This document shows, piece by piece, positions 5,633 to 55,031 of a stretch of DNA of 64,000 nt (positions within the stretch are counted from its first letter, which is position 1; each line of letters starts with the position of its first letter). The notes under the pieces were generated by a model. That model worked only from the letters and a program-made list of their open reading frames with translations, did not search any database and was not told the DNA's origin. The stretch spans positions 620,001 to 684,000 of the forward strand of contig OZ287695.1 in NCBI GenBank assembly GCA_965649825.1, in the 5' to 3' direction. This DNA is from Penicillus capitatus (lineage: Eukaryota > Plantae > Chlorophyta). The position numbers and the translations under genes are program-made.

Positions 5633-8244
5633 TCAAACACGCAGGAGTTCAGTGAGCGCCGCCCGAGTTTCATCCGAGCACTTGGCGTTACTGTCGTCAC
5701 AGATACGATCGAACGGAATCCTGTTGAGTTCATCTGTGCTGTTCTTGTTTGCACCAGCTGCTACGAGCATCTGCCCATAGCTATACCTAAGCGACGGTCA
5801 ACGGGATCGGTAACTTACCTTGGCCGTTTGCAATTTGCCATAAAAAGCTGTTACGTGAAGTGGAGACCCGCGATCGTCTTTAACAATTGCTTCGACATCT
5901 GCACCGTGCTCAAGGAGGATCTTCAAACGTCTCCATTAGCACGGCAGTCCGACACAACCGCTGCTTTACTTTTGTAATCTCGATGTGTTCTCTAAGGGCA
6001 GCTTCGTGCAATGGAGTAAAACCGTTGGTGCTGGCAGTGTTGATGTTCGCGCCGGCTTCTATAAGGATCTGCATTCCGTCGTTAATTAAGTGGACATAGG
6101 AGCGAAGGCACGATTCCGACCTTCACAATCTGTATAGATCCACGTTGAGCAGCTCTTTGCAGTGGTGTCCAACTGTTTCCGTCAAAAACATCTATGTCTG
6201 CCCCAGCGTCTACTAGAATCTTGCTCCACTGACTTATAAACAAGTAGCCAAACGAATTCAAGGCCAACTAACCTTTGCAATCTGTGTGCACCCCCCTGCA
6301 GCTGCATCAATAAGTGGAGAAAAGCCACGGTCATCGCTGAAACTGTCGAGGTACGCGCCATGGTCGACAAGATACTTTTCGGAACTTCTCAGCAAGAGAG
6401 TCGACACAAAGCACTGAGTTAACCTTTACGATGTTGACGTGATTTTTGTTCGTTGCCATTTGAAGCGGTGTCGAGTTGTCGTCGTTTAAGACATCAGTGT
6501 CCGCTCCATGATCAAGGAGAATCTGCTTGCGCGACCGGCACTGCGAGACATGAAAGATGTCTCGCCAACCTTTACGACTCGAGCGCTGTTGAACACCGCA
6601 GCTTCATGCAGAGGCGTATTGCCGTTGGCACTCGGGATGTCAATTCCCGCGTCATACTTTATTAGTACCTAAAGGGAGCAGTCATTTATTAGAAATGAGA
6701 GGACTTGGTGTCTGTCATTCCGCGATTAAGCATCTGCACAGGAGTCTGGCCTTACCTGAGCACACTGCGCGGCGTTAAGCGCAGCAGCTGCGTGCAGCAG
6801 AGTCGAGCGATCCGGTTTCGGAAGTGACTGTACGTCTTTCTCTCCGTAGGTGGTGTCGACGTAGAGACCGGCCAAGATGAGGGCCTCGGCGTCAATGGAG
6901 TTGTCCGACCGCATGGCATGGAGCATCGCCTGCGCAAAACACCGTCCACACTTCGACTTCTATGCAGTTTACTTCGATCATATCCGATTCCGAGAACAAG
7001 GCATAGTGCTTCCGCCTCTCCTCCAACTTGACCTGGCGCGTCGCAACGCACCTCGAACGCTGGGCGCATGTGCTGAAGACGAAGAGTGAATCTCGGATCT
7101 CACATCTTGATGACAGGTGATGGTCCGTTCGATCCAATCGAAGAAGTAGTCGACCCTCGTGTAAACAGCAGGCTCGTCCCCGGAACAAGCGTCGGCGTCG
7201 TCCCCCGCGTAGCCGAATGACGTGATGCCGACGATCATGTCCAGCTGCGGCTTCCCATCCTCCACTTGTCCGTAAGGAGCGTCCATCAGCAGCAGAGGAC
7301 CTCCAGAGTCACCTGCCAGACAGTGTAAGAACATTGCTTGTGAGAGGGTGCTGTGGGGGTCAGCCCAGATGACCTTTGCAGGTGTCCTCCCGCAGACCCC
7401 CAGCGCAGATCCAGCTCTTCGGGTCGACGTCCTGCGGTCTTGTTTTGCATTTGTCCTGCCCGACCACGGCGAGATGACCCGCCACCTGCAGCTTCTTCGC
7501 GACGACGCCGTCTTCGGTGAGTCCCCATCCTGTGGCACCGAGATATTGACCCTTGTCCAGGGGAACGTAGCCCGTGCCCAATCGCGGCAGCGTCACGCCG
7601 GCGTCTCTGTCGAGCTTCAGCACGGCGACGTCGTGTCCATGTCCGACGTCGCCTGTCCACTTGGGGTGGACGTATCCTGCGATCGCATCAAATACCTGCA
7701 CAGACGCGACATGCAGGCCTCGCTTCCGTCACAGAGTGATTCGCAGCTACCTGGTGTTCTTCTGCCTTCTTGCGGTCGTGTATCCCGCAGTAGACGATGG
7801 GCGACAGACCGACGGTGGGGCGAATGTTAGGGTCCACGCAGTGAGCCGCCGTCAGGACCCAGTCGCGTCTGAACAGCGTCGCTCCGCACATGTGGCGGCG
7901 AGTGCCACGTTCTCTCAGGCTGCATGCGTATGGAAACCTTCCAGGCGGCGCCGTCTTTCCTCTCTGTCAACCGTTGGCCTTGAATTCTGCGGCAACAACG
8001 TTTGTAACGCTTACCACTATTCTTCCGACGGCGGTTGTGTTCGACTTAGAGCTTATGTCACTGTTTTTTAATGCTTCGCACAAGAGAAGGTCGTACAAAT
8101 GCAAGTGTTTTCGTTTTCCGCACCTAGAGTGTCGACGGATGCCCATGCCGTCAGCAACAGCGAGTGCAGCGTCAAATACGTCAGCGCGAAGAGCCACTTC
8201 TTCGAGCGGTGTGCTTGCGCGGAAGACGGACGGAGCGCGAACAT
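5633..8244 (-). CDS. Signal peptide + S1A serine protease + ankyrin repeats, type 1, copy A (7 ANK exons + terminal exon)
   Basis: R|[14 protein letters not shown]; TAAHC, GHDVAVL, DTCKG|DSGGP; phase-0 introns link CHQD|[20 protein letters not shown]|AMLHAMRSD.. to the ANK exons; ends ..CSDETRAALTELLRV*; no lesion found. Confidence 0.85.
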
Positions 8245-8379
8245 CTTCTCCAACGAGAATGACGCTTAGATGCGGAAACAGTCAACCAGTCCCGAGTCAT
8301 CTGTTGTACCAAATCGATCTCGAATCATTTGCGTCCCGACAGAATCGCATCATAAGACGTAAGTTGTTAGACGTGATCG

Positions 8380-51959: not shown

Positions 51960-54900
51960 TCAAACACGCAGGAGCTCAGTGAGCGCCGCCCGGGTTTCAT
52001 CCGAGCACTTGGCGTGGGGGGCGCCGCAGATTCGATCGAACGGAATCCTGTCGCCACTGTCTGTGCTGTTCTTGTTTGCACCGGCTGCTACAAGCATCTG
52101 CCCATACCTATACCTGAGCGACGGTCTACGCAATTTGTAAACCTACCTTCGCCGTTTGCAATTTGCCAAAGAAAGCTGCTACATGGAGTGGAGTTCCACG
52201 ATTGTCTGAAGTCACTGCTTCGATATCCGCACCGTGCTCGAGGAGGATCTTCAAACGTCTCCATCGACACAGCAATACGATACAAGGCACGGCCTCACTT
52301 TTTGAAGCTCGATGTGTCCAGCAGTGGACGTTTCGTGCAGTGGAGTCCAACTGCCGACGCCAAAAGTGTTGATGTTTGCACCGGCTCCAACGAGGATCTG
52401 CATCCCGTCGCCTTACGAGTTGATAACAGAGCTAAGGCGAGATTCTGACCTTCGCAATCTGTACGTGTCCCGCGATTGCTGCTGTGTGGAATGGTGTCCG
52501 ACTGCGTTGATCGAAAACATCGACGTCTGCCCCAGCGTCGACAAGAATCTGCTTGCCGATGGTCCTGAAGAGGGACCATCCGACCAAAGGCGCGATTCCT
52601 ACCTTTACAAGTTCAGTGTATCCTTTTTCGGCGGCTGTGTGCAACGGAGTCCAACCTACATGGCTGGCAGTGTTGATGTTTGCGCCGGCTTCAATAAGTA
52701 TCTGCATTCTGCTGTCTTTAAGTGGTCAAAGAACAAGGGCGCGATTCTGACCTTCGTGGTCTGTATAAATCCCCGGTATACACCTTTGTGCAGTGGCGTC
52801 CCACTGTGTTGGTCGAGAACATCGACGTTTGCCCCGGCGTCAACAAAAATCTGCTTTGCGTCGTTCTGAAAAAGGGACATCCGACCAAAGGCGGGATTAC
52901 TACCTGTACAATTTCACTGTACCCTTTGTCGGCTGCTTCGTGTAGCGCTGTCCAACCCTGGTTGTCGAAAGTATCAACGTCCGCCCCTTCTTTAACGAGA
53001 ATCTTGGTCCAATGGATTTTTAAACAAACAACCGAACGAATACAATGCTGGCAAACCTTCGTGATCTGTGTGAACCCCTTAGCAACTGCATCAAAAAGTG
53101 GAGAAGCGCCGTCGTTGTTCCTGAAACTGTCGAGGTCCGCGCCATTGTCGACGAGATACTTTCGGAATCTCTTCAGCATGAAACTCGACACAAGCGTCGG
53201 ATTTACCTTCACGATGTTGACGTGATTTTTGTTCGTTGCCATTTGAAGCGGTGTCCAGTTGTTGTCGTTTAAGACATCAGTGTCCGCTTCATGATCAAGG
53301 AGAATCTGCTTGCGCGACCGGCACTGCGAGATATGAAAGAGGTCTCACCAACCTTTACGACTCGAGCGCTGTTGAACGTCGCAGCTTCATGCAGAGGCGT
53401 ATTGCCGTTGGCACTCTGGATGTCAATTCCCGCGTCGTACTTGATCAACACCTACAAAGTGCAGTCAATCGCTGAGAATGCGTAAACAAGGGGTCTGTCA
53501 TTTCCCGAACGAGAATCTGCATAGGAGTCAGTCTTTACCTGGGCACACTGCGCGGCGTTAAGCGCAGCAGCTGCATGCAGCAGAGTCGAGCGATCCGATT
53601 TCGGAAGTGACTGTATATCTTTCTCTCCGTAGGTGGCGTTGACATAGAGACCGGCCAAGATGAGGGCCTCAGCGTCGATGGAGTTATCAGTCCGCATGGC
53701 ATGGAGCATCGCCTGTGCAAAGAACTGTCTACTGCTCGACTTCTACGCAGTTTACTTCGACCATATACGATTCCGAGAACAAGGCATAGTGCTTCCGCCT
53801 CTCCTCCAACTTGGCCTGGCGCGTCGAAACGCAGCTCGAACGCTGCGCGCATGTGCTGAAGACGAAGGGTGAATCTCGGATCTCACATCTTGATGACAGG
53901 TGATAGTCCGTTCGATCCAATCGAGGAAGTAGTCGACCCTCGTGTAAACAGCAGGCTCGTCTCCGGAACAAGCGTCGGCGTCGTCCCCCGCGTAGCCGAA
54001 TGACGTGATACCGACGATCATGTCCAGCTGCGGCTTCCCATCCTCCAGTTGTCCGTAAGGAGCGTCCATCAGCAGCAAAGGACCTCCAGAGTCACCTGCC
54101 AGACAGTGTAAGAACATTGCTTGTCAGACGGTGCAGCAGGGATCAGTCCAGATGACCTTTGCAGGTGTCCTCCTGCAGTCCTCCAGCGCAGATCCAGCTC
54201 TTCGGGTCGACGCCTTGGGGTCTTGCTTTGCATTTGCCTTGCCCGACCACGGCGAGACGACCCGCCACCTGCAGCTTCTTCGCGACGACGCCGTCTTCGG
54301 TGAGTCCCCACCCCGTGGCACCGAGATATTGACCCTTGTCCAGGGGAACGTAGCCCGTGCCCAATCGCGGCAGAGTCCCGCCGGCGTCTCTGTCGAGCTT
54401 CAGCACGGCGACGTCGTGTCCATGTCCGACGTCGCCTGTCCACTTGGGGTGGACGTATCCTGCGATCGCATCAAAGACCTGCGACAACGCGGCAGGCGTC
54501 GCTTCCGTCACAGAGTGATTCGCAGCTACCTGGTGTTCTTCCGCCTTCTTGCGGTCGTGTATTCCGCAGTAGACGACGGGCGACAGACCGACGGTGGTGT
54601 GAACGTCGGGGTCCACGCAGTGAGCCGCCGTCAGGACCCAGTCGCGTCTGAACAGCGTCGCTCCACACATGTGGCGGTGAGTGCTACGTTCTCTCAGGCT
54701 GCATGCGTAGGGAAATCTTCCGGGCGGCGCCGTCTTTCCTCTCTGTCAACCGTCGGCCTTGGAGTTTTGCGACAAAAACGTTCGAGCGCTTACCACTATC
54801 TTTCCGAAGATGGTTATATTTGACTCTGAGCTCAAGTCCGTGTTGTCCGCGTCGTCCAAGGCTTCACAGAAGTGACCGTCTCCAGAAGAACATGTTTCGG

Positions 54901-55031
54901 TTTTCCGCACCTAGAGTGTCGAAGGATGCCCATGCCGTCAGCAACAGCGAGTGCAGCGTCAAGTTCGTCAGCGCGAAGAGCCACTTCTTCGAGCTGTGTG
55001 CTTGCGCGGAAGACCGACGGAGCGCGAACAT
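51960..55031 (-). CDS. Signal peptide + S1A protease + ankyrin repeats, type 1, copy G (10 ANK exons + terminal exon)
   Basis: Protease nearly identical to D; catalytic H, D and S intact; three extra ANK exons; ends ..CSDETRAALTELLRV*. Confidence 0.85.

What the first reader, a model, noticed from the sequence alone, without database searches (positions are those of the whole stretch)
5633..55031. Seven-member family of secreted trypsin-fold protease-ankyrin fusion genes
Seen: in all seven copies a signal-like N-terminus, intact His/Asp/Ser motifs and the disulfide Cys are joined in frame, via canonical phase-0 introns and a charged linker, to 7-10 ankyrin repeats with no TM segment between them. 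Established: ankyrin repeats are normally cytosolic binders, while S1A proteases are secreted zymogens whose accessory domains are usually N-terminal. I do not know a characterised eukaryotic family with this architecture. Inference: proteases carrying a variable substrate- or pathogen-targeting module, possibly in defence or wound response.
Basis: partly seen in the sequence, partly recalled or inferred. Interest (0 to 1): 0.9.

Follow-up and report, generated by a model that had tools for sequence, protein, structure and literature searches.

The report
Algal secreted trypsin–ankyrin protease gene family
Seven neighbouring genes each encode a secretion-type trypsin-like protease joined in one reading frame to a row of ankyrin repeats; the fusion looks real and is shared with the giant-celled green seaweeds Bryopsis, Caulerpa and Ostreobium, but its function has never been studied.

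Summary
On the minus strand, between 5633 and 55031, I built seven intact spliced genes of 14-17 exons and 632-736 aa. Each has a signal-like N-terminus, a short propeptide, a full-length S1A trypsin domain, a charged linker exon, 8-11 ankyrin units (one per phase-0 exon) and a conserved two-Cys C-terminal tail. His/Asp/Ser and the six canonical Cys are present in every copy.

The copies form two subfamilies. Group A (c1, c4, c7) has Asp189 and a 20-aa linker. Group B (c2, c3, c5, c6) has Asn/Ser189 and a roughly 60-aa K/E/R-rich linker.

The fusion is supported by frame conservation across paralogs, purifying selection on both halves, and two uninterrupted cDNA-like contigs from relatives.

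The architecture is not unique to this window. The same layout is annotated, uncharacterised, in Bryopsis sp. KO-2023 (11 genes found), Ostreobium quekettii and Caulerpa lentillifera. I found no paper describing it.

Most likely these are secretory-pathway protease zymogens with a flexibly tethered ankyrin binding module. The suggested defence or wound role is untested.

The parts
5633..8244 (-). c1 (group A): 14 exons, 632 aa. Layout: signal-like N-terminus (MFALRPSSAQAHRSKK + 21 uncharged residues, ...AWA|SV), propeptide ending GR|IVRG, trypsin domain (Asp189), linker exon 7032-6973 ([20 protein letters not shown]), ANK exons 6929-5633, tail ...RICDDSNAKCSDETRAALTELLRV*.
   Evidence: Model: reproduced by my aligner. 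All 13 introns are GT-AG, 43-87 nt. Pfam Trypsin 129.9 bits, Ank 157 bits. Junction introns: 7103-7033 and 6972-6930, both phase 0.
9160..11774 (-). c2 (group B): 14 exons, 641 aa. TVAHC, GDSGN, Ser189. Linker exon 10656-10495 (54 aa, K/E/Q-rich). Tail ...[15 protein letters not shown].
   Evidence: Trypsin 123.8 bits. Junction introns: 10705-10657 and 10494-10448, GT-AG, phase 0. Two GC-AG introns (introns 9 and 13).
21117..23765 (-). c3 (group B): 14 exons, 651 aa. Asn189. Propeptide ...APF|IIGEE. Linker exon 22643-22467 (59 aa, includes KKTKKERAEKRKIKEERKR).
   Evidence: Hand model, refined. All introns GT-AG. Pfam Trypsin 133.4 bits. Junction introns: 22691-22644 and 22466-22416.
35013..37627 (-). 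c4 (group A): 14 exons, 639 aa. Asp189. Linker exon 36413-36354.
   Evidence: The acceptor of intron 8 is shifted because the ancestral AG is lost, which adds SHN and leaves a 35-nt intron. Intron 12 is GC-AG. Junction introns: 36484-36414 and 36353-36311.
42252..45023 (-). c5 (group B): 15 exons, 681 aa. Asn189. Linker exon 43910-43734.
   Evidence: Trypsin 135.6 bits. The penultimate intron is GC-AG (AAG|GCAAGT). Junction introns: 43955-43911 and 43733-43687.
46679..49446 (-). c6 (group B): 15 exons, 682 aa. Asn189. Linker exon 48328-48152.
   Evidence: Trypsin 131.6 bits. Introns 3 and 14 are GC-AG. An in-frame stop 15 codons upstream of the ATG fixes the start codon. Junction introns: 48378-48329 and 48151-48101.
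51960..55031 (-). c7 (group A): 17 exons, 736 aa. Asp189. Linker exon 53815-53756. Three more ANK exons than c1 and c4.
   Evidence: Ank_2 313 bits, Trypsin 130.5 bits. All 16 introns GT-AG, 43-87 nt. Junction introns: 53886-53816 and 53755-53713.

Best explanation
This is a tandemly and segmentally duplicated gene family. It probably belongs to a siphonous green alga of the order Bryopsidales or a close relative.

Each gene makes one mRNA and one protein that enters the secretory pathway. The parts, in order, are:
- a signal peptide;
- a short propeptide ending at a chymotrypsin-type activation site, so that cleavage exposes a new Ile/Leu N-terminus able to pair with Asp194;
- a catalytically competent S1A protease;
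- a flexible, charged or low-complexity linker;
- a rigid ankyrin solenoid closed by a Cys-containing C-terminal cap.

The ankyrin array most likely acts as a tethered protein-binding module (an exosite or anchor). It would bring the protease to a partner, substrate or surface outside the cytosol, whether extracellular, in the cell wall or in the vacuole. The two subfamilies supply different cleavage specificities: Asp189 (tryptic) versus Asn/Ser189.

Shown: the architecture, the intact catalytic residues, conservation of the fusion, purifying selection, and two independently folded domains joined by a disordered tether (in homologues).

Inferred: secretion, zymogen activation, the targeting role of the ankyrin array, and any biological role.
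For: Fusion is real:
- All seven copies keep one frame through 13-16 introns.
- Between paralogs, exon lengths differ only by multiples of 3. Intron lengths differ by other amounts, including the junction introns of group B (48/45/50/49 and 51/47/51/47 nt).
- dN/dS is 0.13-0.27 for the protease half and 0.36-0.61 for the ANK half plus tail.
- An eighth intact copy with the same 14-exon layout lies on a 600-kb ENA contig (L003).
- Two contigs from relatives carry an uninterrupted signal peptide-trypsin-linker-ANK-tail ORF with UTRs on both sides: L001 (2044 nt, ending in an Illumina adapter) and L002 (1952 nt).
- The same architecture is annotated in Bryopsis, Ostreobium and Caulerpa.

Secretory route:
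- The N-termini have a positively charged start followed by 16-21 uncharged residues.
- There is no other hydrophobic segment and no KDEL/HDEL ending.
- All six canonical S1A disulfide Cys are present.
- The C-terminal tail has a conserved Cys pair, and up to five Cys in Bryopsis.
- Homologues have strongly hydrophobic N-termini and Pro/Ser/Thr-rich linkers.
- A neighbouring gene encodes a signal-like peptide plus the same ANK module without a protease.

Active protease: full-length Pfam matches, and the closest solved structures are matriptase, elastase and kallikrein.

Flexible tether (AlphaFold2 of two homologues):
- P0001: both domains have pLDDT around 90, the linker 285-329 is below 50, and pTM is 0.47.
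- P0008 (short linker): pTM is 0.54.

Binding module: repeat number varies from 8 to 11, and differences between paralogs fall at the canonical binding-surface positions (66% versus 33%).
Against: - There is no transcript or protein evidence for the window's own genes. The exact proteins are not in the 15-billion-sequence collection.
- The signal peptides were judged only by charge and hydropathy. Their hydrophobic cores contain His, Thr and Ser and are only moderately hydrophobic (Kyte-Doolittle 19-residue values 1.1-2.1).
- c2, c3 and c5 have an in-frame ATG 20-21 codons upstream, which would lengthen the N-terminus.
- To my knowledge, ankyrin repeats inside the eukaryotic secretory pathway are rare.
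- The group-B linker (KKTKKERAEKRKIKEERKR) also resembles a nuclear localisation signal.
- AlphaFold2 gives no interdomain interface, so nothing structural ties the two halves together functionally.
- The enrichment of differences at binding positions is expected for any ankyrin protein, and dN/dS below 1 gives no evidence of positive selection.
- Six GC-AG introns and one shifted acceptor could reduce expression of some copies.
Confidence: 0.6

Rival explanations
1. The ankyrin array is a C-terminal pro-domain, inhibitor or folding helper rather than a targeting module. It would be cut off at the exposed, K/R-rich linker during maturation, and the free protease would then do the work.
For: The linker is disordered in the AlphaFold2 models. 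In this window it is full of Lys/Arg sites. Group A enzymes have Asp189 and could cut there. Protease-only relatives exist in the same gene clusters of Bryopsis, Caulerpa and Ostreobium (P0121-P0127, P0132).
Against: No predicted contact between the ANK surface and the active site (pTM 0.47 and 0.54). The ANK half is long (8-11 units), conserved in layout across three genera, and carries its own Cys-containing cap. That is more than a disposable pro-domain would need. A signal peptide-ANK-only paralog suggests that the module has a role of its own.
Confidence: 0.15
2. These are plain extracellular digestive (nutritional) proteases, as proposed for the Peptidase S1 expansion of Ostreobium feeding on organic skeletal matrix. 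The ankyrin array would serve only to anchor the enzyme to the wall or matrix, or to stabilise it.
For: The Ostreobium genome paper reports 189 Peptidase S1 genes, about 40% with signal peptides, and interprets them as extracellular digestion. The gene family is tandemly amplified. The nearest relatives of the window's genes come from environmental and metagenome samples.
Against: The family is also expanded in free-living Bryopsis and present in Caulerpa, which do not bore into skeletons. Two distinct S1 pockets and diverse activation-site P1 residues (R, K, F, Y, L, N) suggest regulated zymogens rather than bulk digestion.
Confidence: 0.15
3. The fusion is an artefact of gene modelling. Protease and ankyrin genes would be separate adjacent units repeated seven times, or the protease would usually be expressed alone by intron retention or early termination.
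For: No RNA data exist for this organism. Retaining intron 5 of c1 would shift the frame and stop translation within about 45 codons, as read from the sequence, giving a protease-only product. Protease-only relatives exist.
Against: Only 43-71 nt separate the protease exon from the linker exon, with no room for a terminator plus promoter. The frame is kept in 7 of 7 copies plus L003. Indels follow the exon/intron pattern. Relatives give uninterrupted fused ORFs on cDNA-like contigs. Independent annotations in three genomes predict the same fusion.
Confidence: 0.05
4. The protein is not secreted. The N-terminal hydrophobic stretch would be a signal anchor or non-functional, and the protein, or its released ANK-linker part, would act in the cytosol or nucleus, where ankyrin repeats normally work.
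For: The hydrophobic cores are only moderately hydrophobic and are interrupted by His. The group-B linker resembles a bipartite nuclear localisation signal. Ankyrin repeats are typically cytosolic, by general knowledge.
Against: S1A proteases with three conserved disulfides need an oxidising compartment. Homologues have textbook signal peptides, for example MALFLILWALCCVS... and MPEKFLLASFLLLLLAPSIVLG. They also have Pro/Ser/Thr-rich linkers and extra Cys pairs flanking the ANK array. The K/E/R-rich stretch fits a charged single alpha-helix spacer equally well; P0001 has a 26-residue helix (328-353) before the first repeat.
Confidence: 0.05

Closest known systems
Uncharacterised Trypsin+ANK proteins of Bryopsidales. 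Examples: Bryopsis sp. KO-2023 BSKO_04694/04699/04702/04705/04750/04794/04795/04805/04809/04837/03471; Ostreobium quekettii 'Peptidase S1 domain-containing protein'; Caulerpa lentillifera g4201, g5115, g5122, g8885.
   Same: Same collinear layout: signal peptide, propeptide, S1A domain with the GRFPY.CSL and WV.TAAHC motifs, variable linker, ANK array, and a C-terminal ...D.IC...C...L..LL.. tail. They also occur as tandem clusters. Full-length E-values are 1e-53 to 1e-93.
   Different: Only 28-42% identical to the window's proteins. Their linkers are Pro/Ser/Thr-rich rather than K/E/R-rich. The Bryopsis tails carry 4-5 Cys rather than 2. None has been studied experimentally.
Canonical animal S1A zymogens with accessory domains (matriptase, plasma kallikrein, coagulation factors, elastase).
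   Same: Chymotrypsin fold, with about 30% identity to matriptase, elastase and kallikrein and TM-score 0.85 to elastase for the homologue model. Also shared: the catalytic triad, three disulfides, an Ile16-type activation site and secretion.
   Different: In those enzymes the accessory domains sit N-terminal to the protease and are extracellular module types (kringle, apple, CUB, LDLa, CLIP). Here the accessory domain is C-terminal and is an ankyrin solenoid.
HtrA/DegP proteases (S1C) with C-terminal PDZ domains. This is a functional analogy only.
   Same: A chymotrypsin-fold protease followed by a C-terminal protein-binding domain that recruits substrates or regulates activity. This is the working model proposed here.
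   Different: A different subfamily: no zymogen activation and no disulfide pattern, oligomeric cages, and PDZ rather than ANK. No homology beyond the fold. The comparison rests on general knowledge and was not tested here.
Designed and natural ankyrin binders (DARPins).
   Same: The homologue's ANK half superposes on DARPins (TM-score 0.88-0.90 on the target). Variation between paralogs falls on the same surface positions that are randomised in DARPins.
   Different: The repeats here are fused to a protease, preceded by a family-specific N-cap and followed by a Cys-containing tail. No ligand is known.
Animal protein XP_031619747.1 (annotated 'serine/threonine-protein phosphatase 6 regulatory ankyrin repeat subunit B-like').
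   Same: Signal-like N-terminus, ankyrin repeats and a trypsin domain in one predicted protein.
   Different: The order is reversed (ANK first, protease last), so it is apparently an independent fusion. It too is uncharacterised.

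Membership tests
Peptidase S1A (chymotrypsin family, Pfam PF00089) | Significant full-length match to the family profile | tested here: met
   124-136 bits against a cut-off of 20.6, profile positions 1-4 to 220 of 220, in all seven proteins.
Peptidase S1A (chymotrypsin family, Pfam PF00089) | Catalytic triad His57 / Asp102 / Ser195 in their conserved motifs | tested here: met
   T[AV]AHC, D[VI]AV[LV][KR]L and GDSG[GN] are aligned in all seven. These columns are invariant across 17 family members.
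Peptidase S1A (chymotrypsin family, Pfam PF00089) | Conserved disulfide Cys pairs 42-58, 168-182, 191-220 | tested here: met
   All six Cys are present at the aligned positions in all seven. Actual bond formation was not testable.
Peptidase S1A (chymotrypsin family, Pfam PF00089) | Zymogen activation: cleavage exposing an Ile/Val16 N-terminus that pairs with Asp194 | tested here: inconclusive
   Motifs are present: GR|IVRG and GK|IVRG in group A; F/Y/N|I[IL]G in group B. Asp194 is present in all. Cleavage itself cannot be tested with these tools.
Peptidase S1A (chymotrypsin family, Pfam PF00089) | Two-beta-barrel chymotrypsin fold | tested here: met
   Tested for the homologues only: the AlphaFold2 model of P0001 has protease pLDDT around 90, and Foldseek gives elastase 1est with TM 0.85 and E 8e-18.
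Ankyrin repeat proteins (PF00023/PF12796) | Tandem 33-residue repeats matching the ANK profiles and forming a helical solenoid | tested here: met
   Ank/Ank_2 E-values of 1e-46 to 1e-95 in all seven. The homologue models have pLDDT above 90 and match DARPins.
Secreted (signal-peptide) proteins | Cleavable N-terminal signal peptide: positive start, hydrophobic core, small residues at -3/-1 | tested here: inconclusive
   Net charge is +1 to +4, followed by 16-21 uncharged residues. Plausible cleavage sites are AWA|S and A[AT]C|R. No trained predictor was available.
Secreted (signal-peptide) proteins | No further membrane-spanning segment and no ER-retention signal | tested here: met
   The highest 19-residue Kyte-Doolittle value outside the N-terminus is 1.48. 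The C-termini are LLRV, ILRV or LLRP, not K/HDEL.
Bryopsidales Trypsin-ANK family (uncharacterised, defined here from database members) | Collinear signal peptide-S1A-linker-ANK layout with a family-specific N-cap and a Cys-containing C-terminal tail | tested here: met
   The full-length alignment of 28 sequences shows a shared consensus, including ...TP.D.IC....C......L..LL.. at the end.
Bryopsidales Trypsin-ANK family (uncharacterised, defined here from database members) | Source organism belongs to Bryopsidales | not testable with these tools
   The window carries no marker gene. All named close relatives are Bryopsidales. GC content of about 50% is near that of Ostreobium (52.4%). The nearest DNA is an unnamed ENA metagenome assembly, ERZ26696514.

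The most novel reading that the evidence does not exclude
In giant single-celled (coenocytic) green algae, these proteins could form a stored, zymogen-based proteolytic system. They would be kept in the secretory or vacuolar compartment and released when the cell is cut. The ankyrin arrays would then capture cytoplasmic or microbial proteins, and the proteases, with tryptic and non-tryptic subfamilies that might act on one another, would drive wound-plug formation, cytoplasm aggregation or antimicrobial defence. That would be an algal counterpart of animal clotting and immune protease cascades, built with a different recognition domain.
Probability: 0.12. Interest if true: 0.8.

Novelty: new variant of a known kind. 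Interest (0 to 1): 0.45.

Why it matters
S1A proteases normally carry their recognition domains at the N-terminus, and ankyrin repeats normally work in the cytosol. A conserved, expanding family that combines a secreted S1A zymogen with a C-terminal ankyrin array is therefore an unusual way to aim a protease. It appears in at least three genera of siphonous algae plus this genome.

These algae survive as single giant cells and are known for very fast wound sealing and regeneration from extruded cytoplasm. The proteins behind that response are largely unknown. Bryopsis sp. KO-2023 has a genome, a laboratory culture and working RNAi (papers listed). The family's role could therefore be tested directly.

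If the ankyrin arrays turn out to be natural extracellular binders, they would also interest protein engineers. If the proteins are only digestive enzymes with an anchor, the finding is a modest addition to algal genome annotation.

Tried and rejected
1. Exact look-up of c1, c3 and c7 in the 15-billion-protein collection found nothing. The single-exon ubiquitin-like ORF was also not on record. The source assembly could therefore not be named.
I modelled two database homologues instead.
3. The exhaustive profile search of 1.84 billion representatives was swamped by giant ankyrin proteins. Only two fused members, both from Bryopsis, appeared in the top 150, so it gave no usable family count.
4. 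Literature searches found no description of the fusion. Terms tried: Bryopsis/Caulerpa + trypsin + ankyrin; siphonous + protease; wound plug + serine protease; and the sample accessions. The Bryopsis, Halimeda and Caulerpa genome papers do not mention trypsin or ankyrin.
5. Using a group-A protein as a guide for copies with more repeats produced spurious micro-exons. I fixed these by listing AG...GT phase-0 exons and by allowing GC donors.
6. My first model of c3 exon 1 used a 39-nt intron. I replaced it with the donor conserved in all four group-B copies.
7. I considered reading the K/R-rich linker as a nuclear localisation signal. I judged it less likely than a charged helical spacer, but it is not excluded.
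8. I considered pseudogenes and rejected them for all seven copies: the ORFs are intact and dN/dS is below 1. c4 has one lost acceptor and one GC donor, and c6 has two GC donors.

Full report
**What the window is.** The 64-kb window has about 50% GC and is eukaryotic. Coding segments are short and separated by introns of 35-89 nt. A motif scan and tblastn with a first hand-built protein located seven protease-plus-ankyrin loci, all on the minus strand. They also located ankyrin-only loci on the plus strand at both ends of the window.

**Gene models.** I assembled copy 1 by hand from the sequence. I then wrote a small protein-to-genome spliced aligner, which reproduced that model exactly. I used it, with hand curation, for the other copies.

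The final models are:

| Copy | Coordinates (minus strand) | Exons | Protein length (aa) |
|---|---|---|---|
| c1 | 8244-5633 | 14 | 632 |
| c2 | 11774-9160 | 14 | 641 |
| c3 | 23765-21117 | 14 | 651 |
| c4 | 37627-35013 | 14 | 639 |
| c5 | 45023-42252 | 15 | 681 |
| c6 | 49446-46679 | 15 | 682 |
| c7 | 55031-51960 | 17 | 736 |

- All seven are open from ATG to stop.
- Intron phases are 1, 0, 0, 1 and then 0 throughout.
- Each ankyrin repeat is one 93-111-nt phase-0 exon.
- The two introns that join the protease to the linker and the linker to the ankyrin part are GT-AG and phase 0 in every copy.
- Six of the 96 introns have GC donors. One of them (AAG|GC[AG]AGT, the penultimate intron) is shared by c2, c5 and c6, so it is probably functional.
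- c4 has lost one ancestral acceptor and appears to use an AG 9 nt upstream.

**Domain content.** Pfam finds a full-length Trypsin domain and strong ankyrin matches in all seven. The alignment shows His57, Asp102 and Ser195 in their motifs; c2 has TVAHC and GDSGN. It also shows the six Cys of the three canonical S1A disulfides.

The copies fall into two subfamilies. Identity is 81-86% within group A, 61-65% within group B, and 36-39% between the groups.

| Feature | Group A (c1, c4, c7) | Group B (c2, c3, c5, c6) |
|---|---|---|
| S1 pocket | Asp189, Gly216, Ala226 (tryptic) | Asn189 (Ser in c2), Gly216, Thr/Ser226 |
| Activation site | G[RK]\|IVRG | after Phe, Tyr or Asn (e.g. PF\|IIGEE) |
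| Linker exon | 20 aa | 54-59 aa, rich in Lys, Glu and Arg |

All seven end in a conserved tail, ...PFD.IC....C(S/P)....L..LLR[VP]*.

**Is the fusion real?**

Internal evidence:
- Between paralogs, exon lengths change only by multiples of three. Intron lengths change freely, including the junction introns of group B.
- dN/dS is 0.13-0.27 for the protease half and 0.36-0.61 for the ankyrin half, so both are maintained by selection.

External evidence:
- The best database hits have the same Trypsin-plus-ankyrin domain list.
- Two of them sit on about 2-kb contigs that carry a single uninterrupted ORF with untranslated flanks. One of these contigs ends in an Illumina adapter. They therefore look like mRNA.
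- Another intact 14-exon copy lies on a 600-kb contig of ENA assembly ERZ26696514. It is 76% identical in DNA to group A, including 1 kb upstream.

I put the chance that the fusion is a modelling artefact at about 5%.

**Who else has it.** Named relatives with the fused layout come from three genera:
- Bryopsis sp. KO-2023: 11 genes found, ten on one 7.4-Mb contig.
- Ostreobium quekettii: 4 genes.
- Caulerpa lentillifera: 4 genes. The 'g####.t1' EukProt entries were resolved to this species.

Protease-only relatives occur in the same genomes, and, more distantly, in Tetraselmis and animals. The full-length homologues share hydrophobic signal-type N-termini, activation-site motifs and the Cys-containing tail. 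Their linkers vary greatly in length and are often rich in Pro, Ser and Thr.

The window's proteins are at most about 42% identical to the named ones. The source is probably another member of the Bryopsidales or a close relative, but I could not name it.

**Literature.** The Ostreobium genome paper notes 189 Peptidase S1 genes, about 40% predicted secreted, and proposes extracellular digestion. It says nothing about ankyrin repeats. The Caulerpa paper notes only that peptidase genes are more abundant. The Bryopsis and Halimeda papers mention neither trypsin nor ankyrin. No searched paper combines these terms for these algae.

**Structure.** The tool would not accept my spliced proteins, so I modelled two homologues.
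- P0001: a confident protease domain (residues 39-280), a disordered linker (285-329, pLDDT below 50), a helix (328-353) and a confident ankyrin solenoid with a final helix after the Cys pair. pTM is 0.47.
- The short-linker Bryopsis protein P0008 behaves the same way, with pTM 0.54.
- Foldseek matches each half separately, to elastase or chymotrypsin and to DARPins. No solved structure covers both halves.
- By sequence, the nearest solved proteases are matriptase, elastase and plasma kallikrein.

The picture is two rigid domains on a flexible tether, with no predicted docking.

**Likely mechanism.**
- The charged-then-hydrophobic N-termini, the lack of any other hydrophobic segment or retention signal, the disulfide pattern, and the Cys pair in the tail all point to entry into the secretory pathway as a whole protein.
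- The activation-site motifs and Asp194 point to zymogen behaviour.
- The ankyrin array varies in repeat number and diverges mainly at the canonical binding face (66% versus 33% of positions differ). This is consistent with a binding module whose specificity drifts between paralogs, but the same pattern is expected of any ankyrin protein.
- I therefore favour a secreted or vacuolar protease aimed by a tethered ankyrin binder.
- Rivals are: (a) a removable C-terminal pro-domain, (b) plain digestive enzymes with an anchor, (c) a modelling artefact, and (d) a non-secreted protein.
- The K/E/R-rich group-B linker could be a charged helical spacer or, less likely, a nuclear localisation signal.

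**Surroundings.**
- The window is a patchwork of segmental duplications.
- On the plus strand at about 58719-60366 I could model a gene with a signal-like exon (MKIPVSILLFILAG...), a short charged stretch, the same ankyrin N-cap, five or six repeats and the same tail, but no protease. A second copy is cut by the window start. A third, at about 25900-26630, has an in-frame stop. This suggests that the ankyrin-plus-tail module is itself a secretory-pathway unit that has been combined with different N-terminal parts.
- Other neighbours are two paralogous Cys-rich proteins with a signal-like start and C-terminal membrane segments but no Pfam match, and a single-exon protein with four ubiquitin-like domains.

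**Verdict.**
The architecture is genuine and uncharacterised, but it is already present in public annotations of three genera. The defence or wound role remains a hypothesis.
- It is best filed as a new variant of a known kind: S1A zymogens with an accessory binding domain. It is of moderate interest, and testable in laboratory Bryopsis.

Noticed in passing
window 58719-60366 (+); duplicate at window 1-1040 (+), with its 5' end cut by the window edge; partial copy at window ~25900-26630 (+): A gene that appears to encode a signal-like peptide (MKIPVSILLFILAGDFSVLCTR), a short charged stretch, the same ankyrin N-cap as the protease genes, 5-6 ANK exons and the same tail (...CSAATRAALVELLTP*), but no protease. 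The copy near 26.4 kb has an in-frame TGA in the cap exon and looks like a pseudogene.
   Followed up: partly
window 16728-17786 (+) and 27270-28280 (-); fragments at 15320-15856 (+) and 24266-24748 (-): Paralogous single-exon ORFs of about 340 aa with a signal-like start, many Cys in a repeated C..W.C pattern and two or more C-terminal hydrophobic segments. They have no Pfam match and are 75% identical in DNA to each other.
   Followed up: partly
window 30113-31537 (+): A single-exon ORF of 468-474 aa with four tandem ubiquitin-like domains (Pfam ubiquitin, 189 bits) followed by a Cys-rich C-terminal region of about 150 aa with no match. The exact protein is not on record in the public collection.
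   Followed up: partly
introns at window 9943-9893 and 9340-9298 (c2), 35352-35304 (c4), 42435-42390 (c5), 48991-48943 and 46859-46817 (c6): Six of 96 introns in the family have GC rather than GT donors. That is higher than the roughly 1% usual in eukaryotes. The penultimate-intron GC donor is shared by three paralogs. L003 has one more.
   Followed up: partly
whole window, e.g. 4119-8329 vs 33444-37712; 35561-39617 vs 52962-57008; 24749-26654 vs 57572-59469; 1-1458 vs 59185-60774: The region is built from nested segmental duplications at 72-92% identity. These carry the protease-ANK genes together with their upstream regions and neighbouring genes.
   Followed up: partly
L003 9649-12238 (ENA ERZ26696514, contig ctg303676, 600 kb): Another intact 14-exon group-A-type gene (636 aa), 76% identical in DNA to c4 and c7 including about 1 kb upstream. 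Further fragments lie on three other large contigs of the same assembly (P0145, P0151, P0166, P0189, P0199). The same or a sister genome therefore carries the family at several loci.
   Followed up: partly
window 4213-4722 (+), duplicated at about 33444-33917: An ORF with a weak BTB/POZ match (19.5 bits, just under the cut-off of 20.5), lying just downstream of c1 and again downstream of c4.
   Followed up: no
database protein P0041 (XP_031619747.1, an animal): A predicted protein with a signal-like N-terminus, N-terminal ankyrin repeats and a C-terminal trypsin domain. It looks like an independent fusion of the same two domains in the reverse order.
   Followed up: no
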